From NCBI RefSeq assembly GCF_902459465.1, contig NC_047064.1, positions 22,134,001 through 22,198,000 on the forward strand: a stretch of DNA of 64,000 nucleotides. Reading direction: 5' to 3'. Both the position numbers and the translations under genes were made by a program. The DNA is from Asterias rubens (lineage: Eukaryota). Under the pieces are notes generated by a model. That model saw only the letters and a list, made by a program, of their open reading frames with translations, was not told the DNA's origin and made no database searches. Positions 2,068 to 64,000 of the stretch are shown in pieces (position 1 is the first letter of the stretch; the number at the start of each line of letters is the position of its first letter).

Positions 2068-22036
<19,969 letters not shown>

Positions 22037-39269: not shown

Positions 39270-42080
39270 GAAAAAATCACAAGGGGTAAGTCCAGCTTTT
39301 TCATCAAATTTTGGCTGAAAAAAAAAGAATAAAATCACAAGGGAAAAGTCCAGCATTTTCATCAAATTTTTGCCTTAAAAGGTTAAAATCACAAGAGGTA
39401 AGTCCAGCATTTTCATCAAATTTTTGCCTTAAAAGGTTAAAATCACAAGAGGTAAGTCCAGCATTTTCATCAAATTTTGGCGTAGAAAGGATAAAATCAC
39501 AAGGGGTAAGTCCAGCATTTTTACCAAATATTTGCTTAAAAATGATTCACAAGGGGTAAGTCCAGCATTTTCAACAAATGTTGGTCTAGAAAGGATAAAA
39601 TCACAAGGGGTAAGTCCAGCATTTTCAACAAATGTTGGTCTAGAAAGGATAAAATCACAAGGGGTAAGTCCAGCATTTTCAACAAATGTTGGTCTAGAAA
39701 GGATAAAATCACAAGGGGGTAAGTCCAGCATTTTCATCAAATTTTTGCCTTAAAAGGTTAAAATCACAAGAGGTAAGTCCAGCATTTTCATCAAACTTTT
39801 GCCTTAAAAGGTTACAATCACAAGAGGTAAGTCCAGCATTTTCAACAAATGTTGGTCTAGAAAGGATAAAATCACAAGGGGGTAAGTCCAGCATTTTCAA
39901 CAAATGTTGGTCTAGAAAGGATAAAATCACAAGGGGTAAGTCCAGCATTTTCAACAAATGTTGGTCTAGAAAGGATAAAATCACAAGGGGTAAGTCCAGC
40001 ATTTTCAACAAATATTTGCTTAAAAATGATTCACAAGGGGTAAGTCCAGCATTTTCAACAAATGTTGGTCTAGAAAGGATAAAATCACAAGGGGTAAGTC
40101 CAGCATTTTCAACAAATGTTGGTCTAGAAAGGATAAAATCACAAGGGGTAAGTCCAGCATTTTCAACAAATGTTGGTCTAGAAAGGATAAAATCACAAGG
40201 GGGTAAGTCCAGCATTTTCATCAAATTTTTGCCTTAAAAGGTTAAAATCACAAGAGGTAAGTCCAGCATTTTCATCAAACTTTTGCCTTAAAAGGTTACA
40301 ATCACAAGAGGTAAGTCCAGTATTTCAACAAATGTTGGTCTAGAAAGGATAAAATCACAAGGGGGTAAGTCCAGCATTTTCAACAAATGTTGGTCTAGAA
40401 AGGATAAAATCACAAGGGGTAAGTCCAGCATTTTCAACAAATGTTGGTCTAGAAAGGATAAAATCACAAGGGGTAAGTCCAGCATTTTCAACAAATGTTG
40501 GTCTAGAAAGGATAAAATCACAAGGGGTAAGTCCAGCATTTTCAACAAATGTTGGTCTAGAATGGATAAAATCACAAGGGGTAAGTCCAGCATTTTCAAC
40601 AAATGTTGGTCTAGAAAGGATAAAATCACAAGGGGGTAAGTCCAGCATTTTCAACAAATGTTGGTCTAGAAAGGATAAAATCACAAGGGGTAAGTCCAGC
40701 ATTTTCAACAAATGTTGGTCTAGAAAGGATAAAATCACAAGGGGTAAGTCCAGCATTTTCAACAAATGTTGGTCTAGAAAGGATAAAATCACAAGGGGGT
40801 AAGTCCAGCATTTTCAACAAATGTTGGTCTAGAAAGGACAGAATCACAAGGGGGTAAGTCCAGCATTTTCAACAAATGTTGGTCTAGAAAGGATAAAATC
40901 ACAAGGGGGTAAGTCCAGCATTTTCAACAAATGTTGGTCTAGAAAGGATAAAATCACAAGGGGGTAAGTCCAGCATTTTCAACAAATGTTGGTCTAGAAA
41001 GGATAAAATCACAAGGGGTAAGTCCAGCATTTTTACCAAATATTTGCTTAAAAATGATTCACAAGGGGGTAAGTCCAGCATTTTCAACAAATGTTGGTCT
41101 AGAAAGGATAAAATCACAAGGGGTAAGTCCAGCATTTTCAACAAATGTTGGTATAGAAAGGATAAAATCACAAGGGGTAAGTCCAGCATTTTCAACAAAT
41201 GTTGGTCTAGAAAGGATAAAATCACAAGGGGTAAGTCCAGCATTTTCAACAAATGTTGGTCTAGAAAGGATAAAATCACAAGGGGTAAGTCCAGCATTTT
41301 CAACAAATGTTGGTCTAGAATGGATAAAATCACAAGGGGTAAGTCCAGAATTTTCAACAAATGTTGGTCTAGAAAGGATAAAATCACAAGGGGGTAAGTC
41401 CAGCATTTTCAACAAATGTTGGTCTAGAAAGGATAAAATCACAAGGGGTAAGTCCAGCATTTTCAACAAATGTTGGTCTAGAAAGGATAAAATCACAAGG
41501 GGTAAGTCCAGCATTTTCAACAAATGTTGGTCTAGAAAGGATAAAATCACAAGGGGGTAAGTCCAGCATTTTCAACAAATGTTGGTCTAGAAAGGACAAA
41601 ATCACAAGGGGTAAGTCCAGCATTTTCGACAAATGTTGGTCTAGAAAGGATAAAATCACAAGGGGGTAAGTCCAGCATTTTCAACAAATGTTGGTCTAGA
41701 AAGGATAAAATCACAAGGGGGTAAGTCCAGCATTTTCAACAAATGTTGGTCTAGAAAGGATAAAATCACAAGGGGTAAGTCCAGCATTTTCAACAAATGT
41801 TGGTCTAGAAAGGATAAAATCACAAGGGGGTAAGTCCAGCATTTTCAACAAATGTTGGTCTAGAAAGGACAAAATCACAAGGGGTAAGTCCAGCATTTTC
41901 AACAAATGTTGGTCTAGAAAGGATAAAATCACAAGGGGGTAAGTCCAGCATTTTCAACAAATGTTGGTCTAGAAAGGATAAAATCACAAGGGGGTAAGTC
42001 CATGCAGCACAATTTTCATATTAATTTTGAGGCCACAATGAACAATGTCACAAGGGGTAAGTCCAGCATTTTCATCAATT
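39270..42080. repeat. 54/55-bp minisatellite, about 50 copies, with higher-order structure, between LNPK and HIBADH
   Basis: Unit aaatcacaagggg(g)taagtccagcattttcaacaaatgttggtctagaaaggata (period 54 at 39601/39655); variant units recur; degenerate flanking units. Confidence 0.96.
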
Positions 42081-44802: not shown

Positions 44803-47800
44803 TCATTCTTCTTCTTTGAGGTATTGGTAAGCAGATGAGAAGTCTTTATGACTGTAGCCTTTATTACACATGACTCTGTAGATCTGATGAGCTAATGATC
44901 CTAGAGGTGTTGGTGTCTTTGTGTTGGTCGCAGCGTTCTGAGCTAAGCCGAGATCCTGCAAAGAAGATAAATGATTTTCAATCATTTTGTTGAATAGTTT
45001 TTCTTTCAATCTGAGGGAAGATGTTGTTATAATATATTATGTAATAGATCCAAGGCGCCTCCAAAGGGACTGGCACTGTGACCGGTAGGCATGAAGATAC
45101 CTGTTATAATATATTATGTAATAGATCCAAGGCGCCTCCAAAGGGACTGGCACTGTGACCGGTAGGCATGAAGATACCTGTTATAATATATTATGTAATA
45201 GATCCAAGGCGCCTCGAAAGGGACTGGCACTGTGACCGGTAGGCATGAAGATACCTGTTATAATATATTATGTAATAGATCCAAGGCGCCTCCAAAGGGA
45301 CTGGCACTGTGACCGGTAGGCATGAAGATACCTGTTATAATATATTATGTAATAGATCCAAGGCGCCTCCAAAGGGACTGGCACTGTGACCGATAGGCAT
45401 GAAGATACCTGTTATAATATATTATGTAATAGATCCAAGGCGCCTCCAAAGGGACTGGCACTGTGACCGGTAGGCATGAAGATACCTGTTATAATATATT
45501 ATGTAATAGATCCAAGGCGCCTCCAAAGGGCCTGGCACTGTGACCGATAGGCATGAAGATACCTGTTATAATATATTATGTAATAGATCCAAGGCGCCTC
45601 CAAAGGGACTGGCACTGTGACCGGTAGGCATGAAGATACCTGTTATAATATATTATGTAATAGATCCAAGGCGCCTCCAAAGGGACTGGCACTGTGACCG
45701 CTAGGCATGAAGATACCTGTTATAATATATTATGTAATAGATCCAAGGTGCCTCCAAAGGGACTGGCACTGTGACCGGTAGGCATGAAGATACCTGTTAT
45801 AATATATTATGTAATAGATCCAAGGTGCCTCCAAAGGGACTGGCACTGTGACCGGTAGGCATGAAGATACCTGTTATAATATATTATGTAATAGATCCAA
45901 GGTGCCTCCAAAGGGACTGGCACTGTGACCGGTAGGCATGAAGATACCTGTTATAATATATTATGTAATAGATCCAAGGTGCCTCCAAAGGGACTGGCAC
46001 TGTGACCGGTAGGCATGAAGATACCTGTTATAATATATCATGTAATAGATCCAAGGCGCCTCCAAAGGGACTGGCACTGTGACCGGTAGGCATGAAGATA
46101 CCTGTTATAATATATTATGTAATAGATCCAAGGCGCCTCCAAAGGGACTGGCACTGTGACCGGTAGGCATGAAGATACCTGCTTAAAGAAATCAAACCAA
46201 GGGAGACTTTTATCAAATTGCTTACATAATTGGTTGGTGCACTTGGCTGCGGATCAAGAAGAAAAAACAAATTTCCCTGTAAAGATGGTGTAAATCAATA
46301 TTCAACAATTATGTAAGAGCGCCTCTTGTAACCAGCTACATCGACCCATATGTGACCACTGCCCGAGATCAAAGGCGCCTAATTTTCCTAAGAGGGGAAA
46401 ACCGGGAGCTCAGAAAAAAACCTAATTGCATAGGAGAACAATGACACATATGGCCAAACCAGGGCCAGGGTGGTGAGAGGCAAGTGCTTCACGCACAGGC
46501 CACAATTGTTAGCTTCTTTTTATAGAAAATTTGCCTTAAAATGAAGCTACCTTTGTCATGAGAGCTGTACTGAATCCACCCTTGTAGTTATTGCTGGAGG
46601 GGACCCCATCAAGCACCCCTGGTACTGGGTTATAGGTGTCACTAGACCAACTACGCCCACTACTGGTGTTTAAAATCTGGGCTAACATCATTGGGTCAAG
46701 ACCTAACCTGTAAATGGATGGAGAGAATGGCACAAATAATCTTCAAAATCACTTTTAATGATCAGTCATTATGTACTAATTTTGGTTCAAATGCTTCTAA
46801 TTGAGAACCAAGTTTTTTACGGCCATTAACCGAGCACATCATTCTCAGAAAAATTGCAACTTCAACAGAATATTTTGAGGCCTCGGAATGGAGAAGGTCA
46901 ATGTCAAATCCAAAATAAATAATTGTAAAAACTGAAAGAACCCACATACCTGATGCCCAAATTCATCGTCTCTGACGTTCCTATCATAGCTATACCCAAC
47001 ATCATATTGTTGCATATCTTGGCCGCCTGGAAATATAAAAATAATCAAAAATGAAATAAGATGTACTAGTTCTCTCTTGATTTCCATGTACTTTTATGAT
47101 CTTGGCCTTGTCCCCTATATGTAGCCCATCATGAATACAGATACCAATGTTATAACCATGAAGGTCAGTATATCGTCCCTCGCAGCATTCACATCTAAGA
47201 CAAGACAGTCCACTATAAAGCCAACCTACCTGACCGGTACCCACTGGTCCAGTGTTGACTACATTCTTCCCCATGCATTGTAGGAGTTCCTTGGCTGCTT
47301 CAAACTCTTCAGGCTTCCCTCCAACCATGAAGGTCAGTATAGCGTCCCTCGCAGCATTCACACCTAAGACAAGACAGTCCACTATAAAGCCAACCTACCT
47401 GACCGGTACCCACTGGTCCAGTGTTGACTACATTCTTCCCCATGCATTGTAGGAGTTCCTTGGCTGCTTCAAACTCTTCAGGCTTCCCTCCAACCATGAA
47501 GGTCAGTACAGCGTCCCGCGCAGCATTCACATCTAAGACAAGACAGTCCACTATAAAGCCAACCTACCTGACCGGTACCCACTGGTCCAGTGTTGACTAC
47601 ATTCTTCCCCATGCATTGTAGGAGTTCCTTGGCTGCTTCAAACTCTTCAGGCTTCCCTCCAACCATGAAGGTCAGTACAGCGTCCCGCGCAGCATTCACA
47701 TCTAAGACAAGACAGTCCACTATAAAGCCAACCTACCTGACCGGTACCCACTGGTCCAGTGTTGACTACATTCTTCCCCATGCATTGTAGGAGTTCCTTG

Positions 47801-50800
47801 GCTGCTTCAAACTCTTCAGGCTTACCTCCAACCATGAAGGTCAGTATAGCGTCCCTCGCAGCATTCACATCTAAGACAAGACAGTCCACTATCAAGCCAA
47901 CCTACCTGACCGGTACCCACTGGTCCAGTGTTGACTACATTCTTCCCCATGCATTGTAGGAGTTCCTTGGCTGCTTCAAACTCTTCAGGCTTCCCTCCAA
48001 CCATGAAGGTCAGTACAGCGTCCCGCGCAGCATTCACACCTAAGACAAGACAGTCCACTATAAAGCCAACCTACCTGACCGGTACCCACTGGTCCAGTGT
48101 TGACTACATTCTTCCCCATGCATTGTAGGAGTTCCTTGGCTGCTTCAAACTCTTCAGGCTTCCCTCCAACCATGAAGGTCAGTACAGCGTCCCGCGCAGC
48201 ATTCACACCTAAGACAAGACAGTCCATATTTATTTGTTTATTTCATTAACTATTCCTGTAGGTGCATTTTGTCATTCAACATTGCCCTCCACTGAAGGGA
48301 GGGCCACAGACCAGGCCCCATTTTCATAGAGCTGTTAAGAAAATACTCAAGCAAAAGTTGAGTGGGGCACCAGTTGAAACAATGAACACTTTATGAAATT
48401 TTGGCTGGTAACCAGTTTTTTTAAAGCAATTTTTGTCTGTGCTTAGCAAGTTTGTATGCTTATAGACTCTATGACACTGAGCCTAGCTGTTTAAGCATAT
48501 TTTCTGTGCTTACTATAGCAGAAAAGCAATCACTAGCAAATGTGTATTTTAACAATCCAGAAAATTTGACAGCCTAAATTTCTTGCTAACCTTTGAAAAG
48601 CAAGTTTCTCTAATATAGGTAGCACAAACATGTTTTGTGTGCTTAGGGTTAGCAGTGCTATGACTTGGAAACGCAGTAAGCACACAATCGGCTGTTAAGC
48701 AGCTCTATGAAATTAGGCCCAGAGAGTGAGGCCTTGTCCAAACTGGTGGTTTCTGCTACAGCTTAAACTGTTGCTCAAGTGTTGCTAAGGACATCCTAAA
48801 CTTCAAAGCATGATGAAGTGGTGGTCCAGCCGCAGCAGTAGCTACAAGTTCGTGCCTAGCCGAGTTGCTATCGAGATTTCAGCATTCATTACTTACCACC
48901 AGATACTGGAGCGTCTAAGTACACAGCGCCTTTCTTGTCTGCTTGAGCAGCGACATCTTTTGCAACTGAAGGATCAATGGTGCTGCTATCAATGATTAAA
49001 GTGCCTTTTTTCACAGTTCTGAAAAAGCGTAAAAATTTTTTTTTAAAGGTGTGCTTAACATTTGTTAAGTTGAAAGAGTTCACAGATTTACACCAAACTA
49101 AAAAAATAGTTTAAAGATGATCAAGGTGGAAAGCTTGCCTTAAAATATTTTTGCTTGAAATACTTTAGTTCTTGCAAAATGAGTAAAACAATTAGGCTTG
49201 ATCTTTCAAGTCTAAAATTCAGTTTTTTATTTAGTGATGGTTTTGTCACCCCATAAAACATCTTATTTATTGGAAGAGTAATTCATTTCAATTCGCTAGT
49301 TTCAAAACACACACCTCTAATAACACCATTAAAAATGTGCTACCATTATAGGTTGTCTGATTTTGATCAATATGAAAAATCTAGTGTATGGTTTAGGAAG
49401 TGATTTTTTTGCACATTTATCTTTTGCATGCTTCTTTTGATTGCATGGCAAATAAAATACGCAATGGTAGTTTGAGGATTTCCAATACTCACGATAGTAT
49501 GCCATTCCTGCTGTTATACGCCTCAAGAACGTTGGGACTAGACGGTAACATGGTCACGATACGATCAACTTTCTCAGCAACCTCTGCTGCCGTGTCAGCG
49601 ATCTGTGCACCCTTGCCTTGCAGCTCGCTGACAGCCTCTGGGTAAACGTCATGAACAATGAGCGGGTAGCCTTGTTTTATAAGGTTCTTGGCCATGTGGG
49701 CGCCCATGTTACCCAGGCCGATGAACCCAACAGGCGTCATGGAGGCCTGGAGAGGAAGAATTAAACAATCAATGATTAATAAATCAGAATTTACGAGGGT
49801 GGTCAGGTTGGCATACTGGTATCTTTCTTTGCCTTCAACCTCTAAGAATCATATCGGGGCACTGTGTGAGTTGGGTTTTCAGTCCCTACCTGACTGCATG
49901 GGTTTTCCCTCAAGGTTTTCCTCCCGCATCTAAAACTGAAACTTCTTCATTGTCTTCTCTGCATTGGGTTCTTGGTTAGTACAGTGATTAAGTTCATGTT
50001 TCTGAGGGTTCTTGGCTTCACAACAAAATTTAATAAACCATATGAAATTAATTATACCGAATTATGCTCAAAGTGCCAACCGAGACAAAGTACTCAGGAG
50101 GGGGGGGGGGACACCTAGGATTGTTACTCTCACCTACTGTACTAGAGGTCAAAAGGAGGTTGTATTTTTATTTATTTATAAAATAATCCGTATGAATCTC
50201 ACCTTCTGCTGTGAAGACCCTGGTGGGAAGAGAGTAAAATATATCAGAAATTTGGAAATGACTAATGACAAACACCAATAATTGATGCAAACTAGACCCA
50301 GTAACTGGGGCGCTGTACTCCTTTTTTCGAAATTTTGACCGAGAATGTAAAAATTTCGAAAAAAGGAGTACAGCGCCCCAGTTACTGGGTCTAGATGCAA
50401 ACTACATATTTTGTGTCTCTAGTCTAACATAATAAGAGTCTTAAATTCAAAACAATATCATTTGAACATAAATAAACCGATCGTCAGCCGTAAATGAAAA
50501 TAGGTTCTAAAGAATTTTCATGATACGGCTGACGATCGGCTTATTATGGTCAATTAATATACGTTTGAATGTGTGTGTGTGTACTGTAAACATTGCTCAG
50601 GTACCTTTACTTTTAACCAAGGGCTGGGCCCAATTTCTTAAATTAGCTTGCAATGTGTACACTGTACTGTGTAGGTAACTTTAATCACAAAAACTAGATA
50701 AGTACAGCAGAAAAGTATGGCCTTAAAATAAAATAACAGAATAAGGTTACCACCACAAGACTTATGACTTAACATTGCTGTGACTGGTGCAGTTTTTTTC

Positions 50801-54190: not shown

Positions 54191-57100
54191 TTAGAAGGCA
54201 GCATTGTGTAACTCGGCAACCTTCCTCAGCATTGCTTGGTGACTCGCAAACAGACGAATATTGGAGCTGACTCGTTGCCATCGAACACCCTGAGCGTCAT
54301 CACCAGCCTGGGAGATTGGATGGAAAAAGAAAAACAAACTCATTCAAAAAATCTTAATGAGCAGGTATATCCCATCATAAATAATCTACAAAGGTCAGAG
54401 GTCATCTTTCTGAAGACGATCAGAGCATACTGATCGAAATGTTGAGTTGTCAATCACTGGTTCTTTTCAGAACCAATACTACTCAAAAGAGACTAAAGTC
54501 CGGTTTATACTTACTGCCAATGCCAATGCGATACAAAGTTTTACTTTAAAAATTTGCAGTGAATAATTCGCATCAGTTGAAATGTGCTCAACTCCAGCAA
54601 AATATTCGCTGCAAAAACAGAGACGCTTTACACATGGTGCTACAAGAAACCTGACTCCATTATACTCCCACCTTACAAAGCTTCAAATCCTATCCACAAG
54701 GAAACCTCATTCCATTATACTCCCACCTTGCAAAGCTTCAAATCCTATCCACAAGGAAACCTGACTCCAGTATACTCCCACCTTGCAAAGCTTCAAATCC
54801 TATCCACAAGGAAACCTCATTCCATTATACTCCCACCTTGCAAAGCTTCAAATCCTATCTACAAGAAACCTGACTCCATTATACTCCCACCTTGCAAAGC
54901 TTCAAATCCTATCTACAAGGAAACCTCATTCCATTATACTCCCACCTTGCAAAGCTTCAAATCCTATCCACAAGGAAACCTGACTCCAGTATACTCCCAC
55001 CTTGCAAAGCTTCAAATCCTATCCACAAGGAAACCTCTATCCATTATACTCCCACCTTGCAAAGCTTCAAATCCTATCCACAAGGAAACCTCATTCCATT
55101 ATACTCCCACCTTGCAAAGCTTCAAATCCTATCCATAAGGAAACCTGACTCCAGTATACTCCCACCTTGCAAAGCTTCAAATCCTATCCACAAGGAAACC
55201 TGACTCCATTACACTCCCACCTTGCAAAGCTTCAAATCCTATCCACAAGGAAACCTTACTCCATTAAACTCCCACCTTGCAAAGCTTTAAATCCTATCCA
55301 CAAGGAAACCTGACTCCAATACACTCCCACCTTGCAAAGCTTTAAATCCTATCCACAAGGAAACCTGACTCCAATACACTCCCACCTTGCAAAGCTTCAA
55401 ATCCTATCCACAAGGAAACCTGACTCCAATACACTCCCACCTTGCAAAGCTTCAAATCCTATCCAAAAGGAAACCTGACTCCAGTATACTCCCACCTTGC
55501 AAAGCTTCAAATCCTATCCACAAGGAAACCTCATTCCATTATACTCCCACCTTGCAAAGCTTCAAATCCTATCCACAAGGAAACCTGACTCCATTATACT
55601 CCCACCTTGCAAAGCTTCAAATCCTATCCACTAGGAAACCTTACTCCATTATACTCCCACCTTGCAAAGCTTCAAATCCTATCCACAAGGAAACCTGACT
55701 CCATTATACTCCCACCTTGCAAAGCTTCAAATCCTATCCACAAGGAAACCTGACTCCATTACACTCCCACCTTGCAAAGCTTCAAATCCTATCCACAAGG
55801 AAACCTGACTCCATTACACTCCCACCTTGCAAAGCTTCAAATCCTATCCACAAGGAAACCTGACTCCAATACACTCCCACCTTGCAAAGCTTTAAATCCT
55901 ATCCACAAGGAAACCTGACTCCATTACACTCCCACCTTGCAAAGCTTCAAATCCTATCCACAAGGAAACCTGACTCCATTATACTCCCACCTTGCAAAGC
56001 TTCAAATCCTATCCACAAGGAAACCTGACTCCATTATACTCCCACCTTGCAAAGCTTCAAATCCTATCCACTAGGAAACCTTACTCCATTATACTCCCAC
56101 CTTGCAAAGCTTCAAATCCTATCCACAAGGAAACCTTACTCCATTAAACTCCCACCTTGCAAAGCTTTAAATCCTATCCACAAGGAAACCTGACTCCATT
56201 ACACTCCCACCTTGCAAAGCTTCAAATCCTATCCACAAGGAAACCTGACTCCATTATACTCCCACCTTGCAAAGCTTCAAATCCTATCCACAAGGAAACC
56301 TGACTCCAGTATACTCCCACCTTGCAAAGCTTTAAATCCTATCCACAAGGAAACCTGACTCCAGTATACTCCCACCTTGCAAAGCTTCAAATCCTATCCA
56401 CAAGGAAACCTGACTCCATTACACTCCCACCTTGCAAAGCTTCAAATCCTATCCACAAGGAAACCTGACTCCAGTATACTCCCACCTTGCAAAGCTTTAA
56501 ATCCTATCCACAAGGAAACCTGACTCCATTACACTCCCACCTTGCAAAGCTTCAAATCCTATCCACAAGGAAACCTGACTCCAGTATACTCCCACCTTGC
56601 AAAGCTTCAAATCCTATCCACAAGGAAACCTGACTCCAGTATACTCCCACCTTGCAAAGCTTTAAATCCTATCCACAAGGAAACCTGACTCCAGTATACT
56701 CCCACCTTGCAAAGCTTCAAATCCTATCCACAAGGAAACCTGACTCCATTACACTCCCACCTTGCAAAGCTTCAAATCCTATCCACAAGGAAACCTGACT
56801 CCATTACACTCCCACCTTGCAAAGCTTCAAATCCTATCCACAAGGAAACCTGACTCCATTACACTCCCACCTTGCAAAGCTTCAAATCCTATCCACAAGG
56901 TCAGGACAATTTGTTTTAATCAGGGCAACCACACATTTGAGAAAGAATTTGTGAACAATTGCTTACCTGTAATTCCAGTAGGCTGACTGAGGTTCCGTCT
57001 TCATCGTGGAAGTTCATGGCCACGGTCTCCATCCACGCATTGTCCGTGTTCCGGGGATCATCAACATACCCTTTATAGATCTTCAGAGATTCAAAGAAAA

Positions 57101-60100
57101 TATCTCTATTTAAAGACAGCCACTAGACACTATTGGTAATTACTCAAAATGATTGTTATCATAAAACCTTACTTGGTAACAAGCAATGGAGAGCTGTTGA
57201 TAGTATCAAACATTGTGAGAAACGGCTCCCTCTGAAGTAACATAGAAAGAGTCTTTGAGAAAGAGGTAATTTCTCACTCAAATAATAAAAGACTTCAGGC
57301 CTGAAGCCTTTTATTAGGTATCTGATGAAAGCACATCAACTTGAACAACAGGGTGTTTTTTCTTTCATTGTTCTATTGCAACTTTGATGACCAATTGTGG
57401 CCGAATTTGTCTAGTAGGGCAGTTTAGACTGGTACATCTTTTGAAACATATTTTCTTCCTTAATAAACTAGCTTAGTCAGATAATCTTTCCATTTTTCCA
57501 TTTCTTACCTCCACACCATTGCTAAATAGATCTTCAATCTTCTTGGCTAACAAGGCAACCTCGTCCATTGATTTCTCCATTGATCCAAGAGCTTCTTCAC
57601 CGAACTCTCTCTTGAGTGTGGCACTAACAACATCTCCTGGCTCAACCATACCCTGAACAAAAAAACAAACAAATAATAATAATAATAATGGACATTTGTA
57701 GGGTGTCATGTCTGTCAGAAAGATACTCCTGGCACATAGAACAAAAAAGCCAAGACGGAACAAGTGAGATTTTAAGTGAGTTTTCAAGTTGGATAGAGTA
57801 TCTCTTAGTCTGAGGTTCAGTGGAAGGGCATTCCAAAGAGATTGACCAGCATACAAGAAAGAACAGTCTCCCCAAGTGTGTTAAGAACTACAAATAACAA
57901 GACTTACCCCTGGTATGGCCCACTGCTGATTATCCTTCCGCTGTACAGCAACAAACTCCAGAACCTTCTGTCCGTTGTCTTCAATAATTACGCCATCGGA
58001 ATTCTTCTTCCATCTTTCATGAAATAAAAACCAACAACACTTATTAATAAAATAATAATAATAATAATAATACCTAATCTCAATGGGCTTAACACTAGTA
58101 CCCTGGTCATTGGGCAATAACATTCCTTAAATCTTTCTCAGCTCCCTGGAGTGTACACAGCACTGAGCTGCCATATGGTGCTAGTAGCTTTTTCATACAG
58201 CTGAAGAAAACTCTTCAGATCTTGCAGAAGTTATAAACTAACCTTGTGACAATTGGATCTGCAGCGTGGTTGGGTCCAAATCGACCCAGCAGTCCGCGGC
58301 CAATCATCCCGGTGCGACCTCGTGGATTCCTGTGGAAATTGAGGAATGAAATAATATCAAGAATTCTTGTATCATCTTTAAAGTTCTAATACAAACCTTA
58401 TTTTTTTAGTTTATAACAATTTCAATCTGATCGTAAACCTTGTAAATAGTTCTTCATAAACAGTTTATAATAGTTTCAGTACAATTATAAACTTCATAAA
58501 CAGTTTAAAACAGTTTAAATCTGATTATCAATTTCACAACCTAGATAAGGTTGAATCTGATTACAAACTTTACAATAACAATCCTCCAGAGAAACATTTC
58601 TGTTGCACATCATCATAGTGTGATCACCAAAATTTGTTGACATTTGAAGAAATTGAGGTTGCACGATGTATTTATAGACATTTTAACAGATATTGAATTT
58701 GCTGTTATCATAAACAAGGACATACTTTCTCTTTTACAGACAACGAACAGGCCTGGAATTACATGCAGGCCACAGAGAGGCCTTGACCTTCATTGCTTCT
58801 AGTATTGGCCTTGGTGCCCCTTCAAAGGTTTCCCATTTGACTGAAAGATTTTCCAATGGAAGTGCCCTTTGCAAAATGAAAATGGCCTTGCATTTTTAAA
58901 GATGAAGTCCCAGGCCTGAACAAAACACTCCTAATTTGAACTTACTGTGGCACACCGTCCGTGACATTATAGTGTCCCATGAAACTCACACGGTCGTAGT
59001 TGACTGATTTGTCGAGCATGTTAAAGTTCAACATGGGTCTCTCGCTCTTAGAGTACTTGAGCAAGTCAATGTCGGCAAAATGTGGCAAGGCTAGAATGCT
59101 TTCGTGGGTGTAGCTGACTGGCTTGTAGAAATGAAAGCTAACCTGTGGGAGATTTGTTGACAAAACGTTGCACTGTTAAGGGTTTCTACTTTATTTTGTT
59201 TCACTTTATTTTACCATGCTATAGAAAAGAAAAAAAAACGTACATTGGATTCTATATATCTCCCAGGTGAGTTTTCCCAAGAATAAATCCTTGAGCAAAC
59301 CTTCAATAGCAAAGGATGTGTGTGGGTATAAGGGGTTCGGGTACATACCTCCCAGGGTACCTTCTCATCGGGTACCGGGGACCGACCAATGGCAGTTCCG
59401 GGATAAGGACTTGAGCGTGCCTTATGATGGAGAGTTATCCCAAGCTCTTCTAGCGTTGATGGAACCTTTCGTTCCTCACTCTCAGAGGTATAGTTCTCTT
59501 CCACTGGTGTATGAAAAACAAGATCAAGAAAAACCTTATTACCACCAAAATGTTTCTCCTTCTAAGAATATTTCTTATTTTGATTAAAACAGCTTCCCTT
59601 CAGAAAAGTAATTAATAAACAATTAAGATCATACAAACACAAACATTTCAGAATGAGAAAGATGACTTTTGAGGGTGCTATTGTGAAAATTTTTTGGGGT
59701 GGGGGTGCCATTTGTAAAAATTTAAGTAACCGTGTAATGTCTCCATGTGTCCTTTGTAAATTCAGATGTAATTCGGAACTTGGGCTGTGAGTTTTGAATT
59801 TTATTAATAAACCAGAATAATAATGATAACAATATGATCAATCACTAAAAAAAACAGTACGTGAAAGGGTTAAATAAAACCTACCTTCTCTCGGCTTGAT
59901 CTCTTTCAGCATTGGTGGACCTTCTAAGGATCCCAGTTTATGGTCACGAAGAGATGTTATAATCCAATCAATAGCCTGATTGGTCCTCTCCATCTAGGGT
60001 TAAAGGTCAGTCATAAAGGTTAGAGGTTAACAGTGGTCAAAATGAGTTCAACTCTCCTGAACAGCCTAATATGTCAAGTTGCTCTAATGCTTTTGGTTTA

Positions 60101-63100
60101 ATGTCTTACTAACTTCTCAAGTCTGTTTAATCTTTACCTTATAGCATTCTAGTCAAGTGACACTAACTTCCTTTACCCTAGACTTTTGTTTGGTTTCAAC
60201 CCCAGCCTTCTTAGAAAGTCACTGCAGAATCTCGGGTCTTACCTGGTCCTCCAGTCTATTCAATCTTTCCTCCATGGCCTTCTCACCAAGTAATCCTAAA
60301 GCTCTTGACGGCATCCCTGTCTCAGGATCAGCAAAGAGTTCTTCCATCTTCCCAAGTAGATCCTCAACTCTGGAAAGAAACCAAGTCTAAGATAAGAGAA
60401 TGGATTTGACAATGCTGGCATGGCATGAATCATTATGAGATGTGTAAACGGGTTGATGAAAGTCATGCTGCATCTTGTACGGCAATGCACTTTATCTGTC
60501 AATACTTGAATCTTAAATTGATAACTAAAGGGTACTGCACCTTGTCTGCCGAGCCCCTTGTACAACAGGAAATTACAATAATGAATTTCCAGCAAAGAAA
60601 CCAAAGGATCCTCTGAAAAGTAGAGGGAAAGTCAACCCAGCTCTCCCCGGTACTCACCTCTCCCCGGTAGTCATGACTTGTTTATTGATGTCACTTTGCA
60701 TCAGGCGCCTCTCCTGGGTGATGAAGTCGTCGCTTTGTATGGCTTCCCATAAAATCAACTGCCTCGCTTTAGAATCCGAGATGTGTTGCCCTGTTCAAGT
60801 CAATCCAAATTAAAAACATTCAACCACAAAATCTTCACAATTTATTAATCAAACTCATGTGTTCTGAACAAAATTATTGATGAGTACTTGATAGACCTTT
60901 CTTATGATAATTATGTAAATTGCACATACAAACCAAGTTTGCACTAACATTTGGTTCACAAACTGAGGGAACATCGTGCTGTTTTGTACATGTTGTGTGC
61001 GGCTAATGGTGACGTGATGACGCAGGTAGCGATTGTGCGTCTGCTTTGCCAACCAATAGGGTCTGAACGCATGCGTGAATGTATCCCCACTAGCATACTT
61101 CATGGGAAGAGTCTATTAACAAATATAAACTCTGTTTCAACTAACAATACCAGTAGTCTTTTTTAGTGCACCCATCGACCATCAAGTGCACCCATACCCG
61201 CAACCAAAAGTAGACTGGTAGTCTGCACCATGCAAAGGTGTGTAACTAATCACCAGTTTACCAACTCCCATGCATTAATATGGCAACGGTTTACATACAC
61301 TGGGCTTTGAAGGGCCTTCTACCGGCAAATAGGTTGTGAGCATTTTTCCCAATGTCACTCATGACGCTACTCACTCTTCTCAAAGATGAGTGCTGAATCA
61401 GGGGAGCTGAGTTGACGGAGTTAGAAATCAGATAGATGAAAAAAACGCTGATCCCATTGTAGTTACAATAATAGTAATGAGCCTTTCCATATCATGATGC
61501 TCAGTAACAATAAAAGATAGTGATAATTAATGAGCTACTGGAAAAAGGTGATTTTTTAAAATAGTTTTTGTTATGAGACATGGCATGTATCACAAGACTG
61601 GACGACCACTTCAAGGCGAGGGGTACACTGAACTGATTTGGGGTATCGACCCAAATCCACTGCCACCAGGGGCAAGTTGCTATCTACTCCTTGGGATGAA
61701 ACGGGGCACAGAGGGATTTGTGAATTTTTTGCATATCAGTCGAAATTTGCGCCTATCAGAACACAATTCAGGCGTATCGACCTGCTACACTAGCTTGTGT
61801 AGCTCTGCATAGGGAGACCTTTGATTTGTAGAGGGTTTGATACTTTTCTACAACTCACTCATCTGTCCACTTCGGTAAGAGATGCAGCAGCCGCAGATTT
61901 TCTGAATGAGGAAACGGCACAGGAAGAAGACGTGAGCTATGATGATGAAGGGAGGCACAATGGCCGGTCGGTTGAAGTACTCCTTAATCAGATCATAGCG
62001 TTGAAATCGCCAGTAGACGTCTGTGTTCTCTTGGACTGCTGAGAAGGTGTAGCTGTTGGCAGAATAAATCACAAGTAAATTTGATGCATGGTTTTAATGG
62101 CACTGCTGTAGGCACCCTGAGCTGCCTGCAAGCCGTCTGGTGCTGTGGGAACCAACTCATGGGGTGAAGCTGAGGAGAAGACAGAGGTTGAGCTATGGCC
62201 GTGTCTTGAGGAGAGATGCTGGGGCAGAGACCACAACAGAGTTGGCTGCCTGTATTCAGGACAGGAAAGATAGGAGACGCCACCAGGTGGGATCCCGAAA
62301 AACTAGCGAGCATGGAGCTCAATTAATAACATTTATCTTTAGTTTTAAAAGCCCTACTCTGTAATCTGTTATCATTATTATTATTTTGGGGGGTGGGGGG
62401 ATAAAAACAAAACAGTTTTTCTTTTTTAGGGCAAAACAAAATTGGAATTCCGTTTTAAAACAGAGGAATCACATCCCTGAACATCACAGGCATATTACTC
62501 AGGTGGGATTACCTAGATTTGTTTTAAGAAGGTTCCTTACCTAAACATAGCAATGAGTAGATTGAGTAGCAGGACATTGCTCAGCATCATGTACACTGCT
62601 AACAGAATGACTCCAATAGTTGAATACTCAGCACACCGTGGAGCGCCAGCTTCAATCAATGTTAAATCGTTAGAACAACCGTTGTTCCCTGTAGGGAGAA
62701 ACCAAAAGTAATCAGTCATCTGCAAGACTTAAAGGCACTGGACATGTTTAGTAATCAGTCAACATCTGCAAGACTTAAAGGCACTGGACATGTTCAGTAA
62801 TCAGTCAACATCTGCAAGACTTAAAGGCACTGGACATGTTTAGTAATCAGTCAACATCTGCAAGACTTAAAGGCACTGGACATGTTTAGTAATCAGTCAA
62901 CATCTGCAAGACTTAAAGGCACTGGACATGTTCAGTAATCAGTCAACATCTGCAAGACTTAAAGGTACTGGACATGTTTAGTAATCAGTCAACATCTGCA
63001 AGACTTAAAGGCACTGGACATGTTTAGTAATCAGTCAACATCTGCAAGACTTAAAGGCACTGGACATGTTTAGTAATCAGTCAACATCTGCAAGACTTAA

Positions 63101-63621
63101 GGCACTGGACATCATTAGTAATCAGTCAACATCTGCAAGACTTAAAGGCACTGGACATGTTTAGTAATCAGTCAACATCTGCAAGACTTAAAGGCACTGG
63201 ACATGTTTAGTAATCAGTCAACATCTGCAAGACTTAAAGGCACTGGACATGTTTAGTAATCAGTCAACATCTGCAAGACTTAAAGGCACTGGACACGTTT
63301 AGTAATTGTCAAAGACCAGTAGACCAGTGACTGAAAACACAAGAGCTTGGGTTCGTTGGGTTAGTTAGATCGCTTGGCCACGACACTCTACGTTTGGTGC
63401 AATAGATCTTATAGCCATGACATTCAATTGAAAAACAAAAACCTACCTTGGATATCTTCAAGGAACAGTTCCCCGTACATCTGGAAGTAAGCTTTAAAGA
63501 AGACACCAGAGATGACCTCATGAAAGCTGGACCCATTGGGGAAGAGGATTGCCTGGGATGCAACGCCGTAAGCAACAAGAAACACTGAGAGGATGGCAAT
63601 GAAGAAAGCAAGATCTACCAT
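54191..63621 (-). CDS. TRPM2: TRPM2-like cation channel with C-terminal NUDT9-homology (ADP-ribose pyrophosphatase) domain; 3' part only, 13 exons in window
   Basis: Exons 63447-63621 (S5/pore, [13 protein letters not shown]), 62541-62688 (S6, [12 protein letters not shown]), 61859-62052 (TRP box, [16 protein letters not shown]), 60658-60790, 60243-60369 (coiled coil), 59885-59993, 59349-59503 ([20 protein letters not shown]), 58946-59142, 58243-58329 ([29 protein letters not shown]), 57908-58013, 57509-57652 ([21 protein letters not shown]), 56967-57080 ([18 protein letters not shown]), 54191-54307 ([15 protein letters not shown]..stop). Phases are consistent; the 5' end lies beyond the window. 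Confidence 0.92.
54641..56900. repeat. 55-bp minisatellite, about 41 copies, in the last TRPM2 intron
   Basis: Unit aaggaaacctgactccattatactcccaccttgcaaagcttcaaatcctatccac. Confidence 0.97.
57110..57404. mobile_element. Kolobok/T2-like MITE K1, copy f (truncated)
   Basis: ttaaagacagccactagacactattggtaattactcaaa and K1 body; right TIR missing. Confidence 0.7.
57668..57856 (-). mobile_element. LINE (L2-like) 3' end with (TTA)n tail
   Basis: Minus-strand translation [32 protein letters not shown], followed by ctacaaatgtccattattattattatt. Confidence 0.65.
62707..63325. repeat. 46-bp minisatellite, about 13 copies, containing a K1 MITE terminus
   Basis: Unit agtaatcagtcaacatctgcaagacttaaaggcactggacatgttt. 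The last unit continues as gtaattgtcaaagaccagt, which is the K1 body. Confidence 0.93.
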
Positions 63622-63859
63622 CTAGACAAAATAAAAGAACACGGTCAAAGAACCTTGTATTATTTTATATTTTTGTTTATATATTTCTGGCAATAAATCA
63701 TAGATGTCTCATAAGTGAACTTTTTTTTTACTCACTGTAGCTCGCAAGCCTGAGGAAACTTGTTAACAAGGGTGCCTGCTATAATGAACCAGAAAGACTG
63801 GGGCTTTTCCCTACTCATCCACAGTACGTGCACAATAAATACTCATACATGCGACCTAC

Positions 63860-64000
63860 AGCTTAATATTCCATCCAATAGACAAAGCAATTATGGTAAA
63901 GCATCTTGTGTGCAAGGACACAAGTGCCTCCACTGGGATTTATACTTACATTCTGCTCATCAGAAACACCACAGCTTGAGTACTGTGTTCTTTATCGCTC
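63860..64000 (-). mobile_element. Partial tRNA-derived SINE
   Basis: Minus strand gagcgataaag..actcaagctgtggtgtttctgat..cacttgtgtcct resembles 36308-36480. Confidence 0.5.

What the first reader, a model, noticed from the sequence alone, without database searches (positions are those of the whole stretch)
47154..48226. Six-copy tandem exon cassette in HIBADH that appears built for forced mutually exclusive splicing
Seen: the 134-nt exon ([45 protein letters not shown]) occurs six times, plus a 41-nt partial seventh, each with an intact AG and GTAGGT and separated by only 35 nt. The shortest normal intron I found in this window is 198 nt. The exon is phase 1 to phase 0, so including two or three copies, or retaining the spacer, frameshifts to a stop. 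Copies differ in coding: 48075 and 47906 = G/V, 47737 = D/I, 47568 and 47399 = D/V, 47230 = G/I. The G-to-D change hits the second Gly of the conserved DAPVSGG motif. Established: spacers below the minimal intron size cause steric mutual exclusion, and mixed-copy products are removed by NMD. Inference: a nascent mutually exclusive exon cluster in a housekeeping valine-catabolism enzyme, giving up to four protein variants (half the copies possibly inactive), or a copy-number-dependent expression control.
Basis: partly seen in the sequence, partly recalled or inferred. Interest (0 to 1): 0.86.

Follow-up and report, generated by a model that had tools for sequence, protein, structure and literature searches.

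The report
Whole-exon minisatellite in sea-star HIBADH
In the common sea star Asterias rubens, one exon of a housekeeping valine-breakdown enzyme gene has been copied six times head to tail by an unstable repeat; the messenger RNA still carries one good copy, so this looks like young, probably neutral repeat growth rather than a built-in switch between protein variants.

Summary
A 169-bp unit (17 nt of intron, a 134-nt HIBADH exon, 18 nt of intron) occurs 6.3 times at 47154-48226.

The window is Asterias rubens (GCA_902459465.3). The array is not a one-copy artefact: independent ENA assemblies carry both array ends and an internal Asp-type copy. The figure of six rests on the reference assembly alone.

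The sister species A. amurensis has one full copy plus the same 58-nt partial copy. So the array is an A. rubens-specific expansion of an older splice-site duplication.

Two RNA assemblies and the RefSeq protein each contain exactly one copy, always with Gly. In A. rubens-type RNA that copy has the first-copy haplotype. Asp replaces a Gly that is invariant in 78 of 78 representative homologues. One internal copy has also gained a GGTAAG donor. I read the internal copies as unconstrained pseudo-exons.

Steric exclusion applies only to neighbouring copies. Non-adjacent copies lie 204 nt apart and could be joined, so the frameshift stop, not the spacing, is what would remove such products.

The scan has already noted many splice-site minisatellites elsewhere in this genome. 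The closest known kinds are amphioxus "mirages" and tandem exon duplications. Interest is modest.

The parts
47154..48226 (-). 169-bp tandem array: six full units plus a 58-nt partial unit. Each full unit holds a complete HIBADH exon with both splice sites.
48075..48208 (-). Exon copy 1 (Gly/Val; haplotype G-C-G at unit positions 17/31/40). It is the only copy with a unique upstream intron and branch region. Most likely the exon actually used.
   Evidence: RNA contig X15 record 9 matches it with 0 mismatches. The RefSeq protein P0275 has Gly/Val.
47906..48039 (-). Exon copy 2 (Gly/Val; exon identical to copy 1). The spacer after it carries T>G.
47737..47870 (-). Exon copy 3 (Asp/Ile). A G>T at unit position 63 creates an internal GGTAAG donor-like site.
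   Evidence: The T63 marker is also present in DNA run X1 (47317 C>A).
47568..47701 (-). Exon copy 4 (Asp/Val; haplotype A-C-G).
   Evidence: The same haplotype is the second copy in the independent contig L002.
47399..47532 (-). Exon copy 5 (Asp/Val; identical to copy 4).
47230..47363 (-). Exon copy 6 (Gly/Ile; haplotype G-A-A). This is the haplotype of the single A. amurensis exon.
   Evidence: The independent contig L003 has the same last copy.
47154..47211 (-). Partial unit: 17 nt of acceptor plus the first 41 nt of the exon. It is ancestral, because A. amurensis has it with the same end point.
48897..49018 (-). Upstream constitutive exon, ending ...DAPVSG plus the first base of the Gly/Asp codon.
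   Evidence: RNA joints 49018/49493 and 48206/48895 (cut +2).
46950..47026 (-). Downstream constitutive exon ([25 protein letters not shown]-).
   Evidence: RNA joints.
49493..49746 (-). Exon with the dinucleotide-binding motif ([13 protein letters not shown]...).
46551..46707 (-). Next exon (LGLDPMML...ALMTK).
44803..44955 (-). Last coding exon (DLGLAQ...KEEE plus stop).

Best explanation
This is a young, Asterias rubens-specific minisatellite that expanded from an older 'mirage', a duplicated splice-acceptor edge, until its 169-bp unit spanned a whole HIBADH exon.

Shown: the ancestral state, still present in A. amurensis, is one full exon followed 35 nt later by a 58-nt partial copy of its acceptor and first 41 nt.

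Inferred: these two 58-nt direct repeats, 111 nt apart, are a ready substrate for unequal crossing-over or replication slippage. That generates 169-bp units, and repeated exchanges between alleles built the present array. All four combinations of the position-17 and position-31/40 variants occur, which points to recombination between units.

Shown: the mRNA contains exactly one copy, with Gly.

Inferred: the copy used is the first. Only its branch region lies in unique intron. Every later acceptor has its branch site about 14 nt behind the preceding donor and would be occluded when U1 sits there. Transcripts that still join non-adjacent copies hit a stop in the second codon and would be removed by nonsense-mediated decay.

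Inferred: the internal copies are therefore intronic pseudo-exons under no protein-level constraint (Asp at an invariant Gly, a new GGTAAG donor). The array is neutral or mildly costly, not a designed isoform switch.
For: - The array and its variants are in the sequence.
- The window is identical to the A. rubens reference, and its exons match RefSeq XP_033625268.1 100%, with a Gly/Val cassette.
- The A. amurensis chromosome assembly has one full unit plus the 58-nt partial unit with the same end point. DNA run X6 crosses the locus in one 2072-nt contig at flank depth with a single full copy.
- Independent ENA assemblies show flank, copy 1, then at least 73-87 nt of a second full copy (L001, L002). 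One of them has an A17-C31 (Asp-type) second copy. They also show previous-copy end, G-A-A copy, partial copy, flank (L003).
- In another sample the last full copy is Asp/Val (P0013), so array composition varies between samples.
- RNA contigs X15 and X18 each join upstream exon, one cassette and downstream exon, with Gly and 0 mismatches to copy 1 and copy 6 respectively.
- All 78 of 78 representative homologues that span the motif have DAPVSG-G. The motif is described as the substrate-binding site (PMC3642240).
- About 20% of the window is tandem arrays. A second array in the same gene (77 bp x 15) is also missing from A. amurensis.
- Mirage arrays in amphioxus vary in length and leave splicing intact (PMC3087553, PMC3902484).
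Against: - No raw reads were available, only contigs, which hide minor isoforms. Use of other copies at a low level, or in other tissues, is untested.
- The genotype of the animals behind the RNA runs is unknown. 'First copy used' rests on matching haplotypes: the first copy is Gly/Val in the reference, L001 and L002, while the last copy is Gly/Ile or Asp/Val.
- Word depth of the array contig in DNA run X1 is only 1.6-2.0 times flank depth, against 3.9-4.4 expected for six copies. X1 looks like a Hi-C library and the unit has no GATC site, so its depth is biased. The number six remains unverified.
- The Asp change is a single mutational event spread by duplication, so it is weak evidence of relaxed constraint.
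Confidence: 0.7

Rival explanations
1. A nascent, functional cluster of mutually exclusive exons. Individual transcripts choose one of the six copies. Choice is enforced by the 35-nt spacers and by decay of frameshifted products, and yields Gly/Val and Gly/Ile enzymes, with the Asp forms inactive or regulatory.
For: The copies have equal length and phase, with intact splice sites. Neighbouring copies are too close to be joined, and double inclusion gives an immediate stop. This matches two accepted enforcement mechanisms (PMC5740500). The Val and Ile forms both exist as working exons in Asterias.
Against: - The sister species has a single copy.
- Only one haplotype per RNA run, and a single RefSeq protein, were seen.
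- Three of the four internal copies carry Asp at a Gly kept in 78 of 78 homologues.
- Copy 3 has a new internal donor.
- Non-adjacent copies can be joined through a 204-nt intron, so the spacing does not force exclusivity.
- Copy order differs between samples, as expected for an unstable repeat rather than a regulated cluster.
Confidence: 0.07
2. The array is real but its size in the reference is mis-assembled. Alternatively it is heterozygous or polymorphic, so that 'six copies' is not a property of the species.
For: X1 array contig depth is 311.8 against 154-201 in the flanks. Six copies predict 3.9-4.4 times flank depth. Samples differ in which variant sits second or last. Mirage arrays are known to differ between haplotypes, and a genome draft has mis-assembled one (PMC3087553).
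Against: - The six copies carry an ordered set of four haplotypes that random collapse or expansion would not produce.
- At least three distinct full-copy contexts are seen in independent assemblies.
- X1 appears to be Hi-C, with GATC insertions at junctions, so its depth is uneven. The tool itself warns that word depth is not copy number.
Confidence: 0.3
3. The array acts as a brake on expression. Each extra copy diverts some transcripts into frameshifted, degraded products, so copy number tunes HIBADH output.
For: Five extra acceptor/donor pairs of identical strength lie inside the intron, and non-adjacent joining is sterically possible. This is inference only.
Against: No aberrant junction was seen in the RNA contigs. 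Amphioxus mirages are reported not to disturb splicing. Nothing suggests selection for such an effect.
Confidence: 0.1
4. Pure assembly artefact: A. rubens really has only one copy.
For: Nothing was laid on 47388-48164 from run X1. However, collapsed contigs are placed only once.
Against: - Independent ENA contigs run from the unique upstream flank through copy 1 into 73-87 nt of a second full copy, well beyond the 58 nt of the partial copy. One shows the A17-C31 combination, which exists only in full internal copies.
- L003 shows the last copy preceded by another copy's end.
- The X1 contig stops exactly at 48226, where a repeat branch is expected.
Confidence: 0.02

Closest known systems
[quoted passage not shown]
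   Same: Both are head-to-tail units of tens to about 160 bp that copy a splice site plus adjacent exon sequence. Length differs between haplotypes or species. Units recombine among themselves, and the normal mRNA is still made (PMC3087553, PMC3902484). The ancestral Asterias state, one extra 58-nt acceptor edge, is exactly such a structure.
   Different: Here the unit grew to include the whole exon with both splice sites. The extra copies are therefore complete, potentially usable exons rather than decoy edges. The host is an echinoderm, not a cephalochordate.
Tandem exon duplication as the origin of mutually exclusive exons (Kondrashov and Koonin 2001 and Letunic et al. 2002, recalled from my own knowledge; reviews PMC9013439, PMC5740500)
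   Same: Homologous exons of equal length and phase lie side by side. Joint inclusion breaks the frame, and the donor-to-branch distance is too short between neighbours.
   Different: Known clusters are mostly ancient and diverged, and each member is shown to be expressed. This array is 98-100% identical, absent from the sister species and variable between samples. Only one haplotype is seen in RNA.
Steric-hindrance exon pairs such as alpha-tropomyosin exons 2/3 (recalled from my own knowledge)
   Same: The branch point of the downstream exon lies too close to the upstream donor, so the two cannot be joined.
   Different: In tropomyosin there are two exons, and regulated factors choose between them. 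Here there are six near-identical copies, and copies two apart escape the constraint.

Membership tests
Mutually exclusive exon cluster (criteria of PMC5740500) | Tandem homologous exons of the same length and splice phase | tested here: met
   Six 134-nt copies, phase 1 to 0, 98-100% identical.
Mutually exclusive exon cluster (criteria of PMC5740500) | Every member is joined to the flanking exons in some transcripts (bridging junction reads for each exon) | tested here: inconclusive
   Only one cassette haplotype per RNA run: G-C-G in X15 and G-A-A in X18, the latter from a taxon with a single copy. There is one RefSeq protein. Contigs drop rare forms, and raw reads were not available.
Mutually exclusive exon cluster (criteria of PMC5740500) | No transcripts join two members, or joint inclusion causes a frameshift | tested here: met
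   The second copy would read GTG TGA or ATG TGA. No copy-to-copy joint appears in the RNA contigs.
Mutually exclusive exon cluster (criteria of PMC5740500) | An enforcing mechanism that covers all members (steric, splice-site incompatibility or competing RNA structure) | tested here: not met
   The steric limit (under 50 nt from donor to branch site) holds only for neighbours, whose spacer is 35 nt. Copies two apart are separated by 204 nt, similar to real introns of 203 and 242 nt.
Mutually exclusive exon cluster (criteria of PMC5740500) | Evolutionary maintenance of the cluster | tested here: not met
   A. amurensis has one full copy plus the partial copy.
Mirage-type splice-site minisatellite | Tandem units that span an exon/intron boundary with its splice signal | tested here: met
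   Each unit carries the acceptor (CTTAG) and the donor (GTAGGT). The ancestral 58-nt partial unit carries the acceptor edge only.
Mirage-type splice-site minisatellite | Length or composition varies between haplotypes, individuals or close species | tested here: met
   There are 6.3 units in the A. rubens reference and 1.3 in A. amurensis. The second copy is G17 in the reference and in L001 but A17 in L002. The last copy is Gly/Ile in the reference and in L003 but Asp/Val in P0013.
Mirage-type splice-site minisatellite | The regular mRNA is still produced | tested here: met
   Full-length RNA contigs with one cassette. The RefSeq protein is 100% identical to the window's exons.
3-hydroxyisobutyrate dehydrogenase (beta-hydroxyacid dehydrogenase family) | Dinucleotide-binding motif, DAPVSGG substrate motif, NAD_binding_2 plus NAD_binding_11 domains, and similarity to solved HIBADH structures | tested here: met
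   The exons encode GFIGLGNMG and DAPVSGG. Pfam PF03446 and PF14833 are recorded for P0275. The related piece P0004 matches human HIBADH 2GF2/2I9P at E=4e-25.

The most novel reading that the evidence does not exclude
The array is a newborn cluster of mutually exclusive exons, still variable in copy number within A. rubens. In this reading different copies, first-copy Val and last-copy Ile, are really used in different tissues or individuals, and the Asp copies serve as built-in unproductive choices. That would catch the birth of mutually exclusive splicing in a wild population, before any divergence of regulatory sequence.
Probability: 0.08. Interest if true: 0.7.

Novelty: new member of a known kind. 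Interest (0 to 1): 0.35.

Why it matters
Textbook models say that mutually exclusive exons begin as tandem exon duplications that are tolerated because double inclusion is lethal to the transcript. Nearly all known clusters are too old to show that first step.

Here the step is visible. The one-copy state with a pre-existing 58-nt edge repeat survives in A. amurensis. A six-copy state with 98-100% identical exons exists in A. rubens, and array composition varies between samples.

The locus could therefore serve as a natural test of how a spliceosome chooses among identical exons. It could also show whether spacing and nonsense-mediated decay are enough to keep a housekeeping gene working.

As it stands, the evidence points to an ordinary by-product of a very repeat-prone genome, with no sign of new function.

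Tried and rejected
- **Run search failures.** The look-up of sequencing runs for RNA failed three times as busy before it worked. All runs offered were Logan contigs, not raw reads, so isoform ratios and copy number could not be measured.
- **Copy number from depth.** The X1 ratio of 1.6-2.0 against 3.9-4.4 expected is not used as evidence against six copies. The library looks like Hi-C, the unit lacks GATC, flank contigs themselves range from 154 to 284, and the tool warns that word depth is not copy number.
- **JGI metagenomes.** A scan for the unit junction found nothing.
- **Fragment alignment.** Aligning all exon pieces to a full-length fish HIBADH misplaced the cassette and the last exon. 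I dropped those two pieces.
- **Profile search.** It was swamped by vertebrate HIBADH but did return the A. rubens RefSeq protein.
- **90% cluster.** It holds no transcript-derived variants, so it says little about Asp or Ile isoforms.
- **Contigs without DNA.** Three ENA contigs (for one P0001 place, P0012 and P0013) came without DNA, so their upstream context is inferred from the called genes only.
- **Origin of the Asp base.** I considered that A17 entered the internal copies from the partial copy by unequal crossover. The direction cannot be told, because the A. amurensis partial copy has G there.
- **X6 partial copy.** As laid, the X6 contig lacks 13 nt of the partial copy, but the A. amurensis chromosome assembly does not. 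This is unexplained and may be an allele or an alignment effect.


Full report
**1. What is in the sequence**

Tandem Repeats Finder reports a 169-bp period, 6.3 copies, 98% matches and no indels at 47154-48226. Read on the minus strand, the units begin at 48225, 48056, 47887, 47718, 47549 and 47380. A 58-nt partial unit lies at 47211-47154.

Each unit is 17 nt of acceptor (GGACTGTCTTGTCTTAG), a 134-nt exon and 18 nt of donor side (GTAGGTTGGCTTTATAGT). So 35 nt separate one exon copy from the next.

The copies differ at five places, given as 0-based unit positions:

| Unit position | Change | Effect |
|---|---|---|
| 17 | G/A (exon base 1) | Gly/Asp |
| 31 | C/A | synonymous Arg |
| 40 | G/A | Val/Ile |
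| 63 | G>T, copy 3 only | synonymous, but creates GGTAAG |
| 163 | T>G, spacer after copy 2 | non-coding |

The haplotypes at positions 17/31/40 are:

| Copy | Haplotype | Protein form |
|---|---|---|
| 1, 2 | G-C-G | Gly/Val |
| 3 | A-A-A (plus T63) | Asp/Ile |
| 4, 5 | A-C-G | Asp/Val |
| 6 | G-A-A | Gly/Ile |

It omitted the synonymous change, the GGTAAG change and the spacer change.

**2. The gene**

The minus strand encodes a 3-hydroxyisobutyrate dehydrogenase.
- The exons contain GFIGLGNMG, then ...DAPVSG plus one base before gtaagt at 48897, then the cassette.
- They continue with AAKICNNM..., LGLDPMM... and DLGLAQ...KEEE.
- A related spliced piece matches human HIBADH structures 2GF2 and 2I9P at E=4e-25.
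- The exon translations are 100% identical to RefSeq XP_033625268.1 of Asterias rubens, whose cassette is Gly/Val.
- The NCBI locus for that protein, GCA_902459465.3 LR699094.1, is letter for letter the window.

**3. Is the array real?**

Only k=31 contigs of public runs could be laid, and these collapse repeats. Support came instead from an ORF that starts in the unique upstream flank and reads through copy 1 into the next copy. That exact 80-aa product is called on three contigs of independent ENA assemblies.
- L001 and L002 run from the unique flank through copy 1 into 87 and 73 nt of a second full copy. That is well beyond the 58 nt of the partial unit.
- In L002 the second copy is A17-C31, a combination found only in full Asp-type copies.
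- L003 shows the end of a preceding copy, then a G-A-A copy, the partial unit and the downstream flank, as in the window.
- A further sample has an Asp/Val copy directly before the partial unit (P0013).

So A. rubens DNA from several samples carries at least three distinct full-copy contexts, and their order differs between samples.

The number six is not verified.
- In DNA run X1 the array contig has word depth 311.8, against 154-201 in the flanks. Six copies predict 3.9-4.4 times flank depth.
- X1 shows GATC insertions typical of Hi-C, and the unit has no GATC site.
- The tool states that word depth is not copy number.

**4. History**

The A. amurensis chromosome assembly (L004) has one full unit (98% identical, G-A-A, Gly/Ile). 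It is followed at once by a 58-nt partial unit with the same end point, CATGGTT then ATAA. Its protein has Ile at that position.

A 2072-nt contig of DNA run X6 crosses the locus at flank depth with a single full copy.

The arrangement of one full copy plus a 58-nt acceptor edge therefore predates the split of the two species. The expansion is specific to A. rubens.
- Flanking divergence between the species is about 5%.
- Copies within the array differ by at most 2.4%.

Two 58-nt direct repeats 111 nt apart are a natural substrate for unequal exchange that produces 169-bp units. This step is inferred. All four combinations of the position-17 and position-31/40 variants occur, and L001 adds G-A-G, which indicates exchange among units and alleles.

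The window as a whole is 19.8% tandem arrays, ten of them. A 77-bp x 15 array in the last HIBADH intron is likewise missing from A. amurensis.

**5. What the RNA shows**

Two RNA contigs were informative:

| Run | Contig | Depth | Cassette | Mismatches |
|---|---|---|---|---|
| X15 | 1472 nt | 51 | identical to copy 1 (G-C-G) | 0 |
| X18 | 1235 nt | 75 | identical to copy 6 (G-A-A) | 0 |

The X15 contig joins 49493/49018, 48897/48208, 48075/47026 and 46950/46707, and its exons match A. rubens. The X18 contig has the same structure, and its other exons carry amurensis-type differences.

In both contigs the first two cassette bases are GT, that is Gly. No copy-to-copy junction and no Asp form was laid.

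In the three A. rubens-type arrays seen (the reference, L001, L002) the first copy is Gly/Val. The last copy is Gly/Ile or Asp/Val. The A. rubens-type mRNA and the RefSeq model are Gly/Val, so they fit use of the first copy (or the second in the reference) and not the last. This is an inference, because the genotypes of the RNA donors are unknown and contigs hide minor forms.

**6. Mechanism**

Each internal acceptor has one well-placed branch candidate, TTTAT, about 21 nt upstream of its AG. That puts it only about 14 nt after the preceding donor. Less than 50 nt between donor and branch point is the accepted criterion for steric interference (PMC5740500).

Neighbouring copies therefore cannot be spliced together. 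A U1 particle on each donor should also mask the next acceptor. Only copy 1 has its branch region in unique intron.

This favours the first copy but does not force exclusivity. Copies two apart are 204 nt apart, like the real 203- and 242-nt introns. The backstop is the frame: a second copy reads GTG TGA or ATG TGA.

I infer that the internal copies are silent pseudo-exons.
- Three of them carry Asp at the second Gly of DAPVSGG.
- That motif is described as the substrate-binding motif (PMC3642240).
- The Gly is present in 78 of 78 representative homologues that span it.
- Copy 3 has gained an internal GGTAAG.

**7. Comparison with known kinds**

The closest described kind is the amphioxus 'mirage'. 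These are minisatellite-like duplications of exon/intron boundaries that vary in length between haplotypes and do not disturb splicing (PMC3087553, PMC3902484).

The second comparison is tandem exon duplication as the source of mutually exclusive exons (PMC9013439, PMC5740500).

The present case sits between the two: a mirage whose unit has grown to a complete exon. It meets the structural tests for an exclusive cluster. It fails on conservation, and on a mechanism that covers all members. It is untested on the key point that each member is expressed.

**8. Verdict**

This is a new member of a known kind and is of modest interest. Its main use would be as a possible natural model for the first step of exon-cluster evolution.

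Noticed in passing
window 45025-46181: A 77-bp x 15 tandem array (98% matches) lies in the last HIBADH intron. The A. amurensis locus has no counterpart for window 46103-45106, so this is a second species-specific minisatellite expansion in the same gene.
   Followed up: partly
window 48276-48830: The intron upstream of the array holds a very high-copy interspersed repeat. Summed contig depth reaches about 122,000 in X1, against about 170 in the flanks. Hundreds of contigs with loose ends map there, in the RNA runs as well.
   Followed up: no
window 47806-47811 (copy 3, unit position 63): A G>T change turns GGAGGGAAG into GGAGGTAAG. This is a consensus-like donor inside exon copy 3 and would cut that copy to 46 nt if used. 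The same base is present in DNA run X1.
   Followed up: partly
window 54200-64000, minus strand: The neighbouring gene is a TRPM2-type channel with a C-terminal NUDT9/Nudix domain. The A. amurensis neighbour is 1634 aa with LSDAT, TRPM2, Ion_trans, NUDT9_N and NUDIX families. Its introns hold a 55-bp x 41 array (54642-56900) and a 46-bp x 13 array (62717-63306).
   Followed up: no
window 39273-42002 and 12898-16824: Two large minisatellites, 54 bp x 50 and 51 bp x 77. Together with the other arrays, about 20% of the window is tandem repeat.
   Followed up: no
window 47154-47179 versus L004 7443-7500: The DNA contig of run X6 appears to lack 13 nt of the partial copy. The A. amurensis chromosome assembly has all 58 nt. 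This may be an allele, another taxon or an alignment effect.
   Followed up: no
ENA contig carrying P0012 (2595 nt, no DNA returned): This Asterias-like haplotype has a Gly/Val copy followed by the partial copy and shares the amurensis-type 7-nt insertion downstream. No further ORFs are called in the 698 nt upstream, so it probably has a single copy. It may be a third taxon or an introgressed allele.
   Followed up: no
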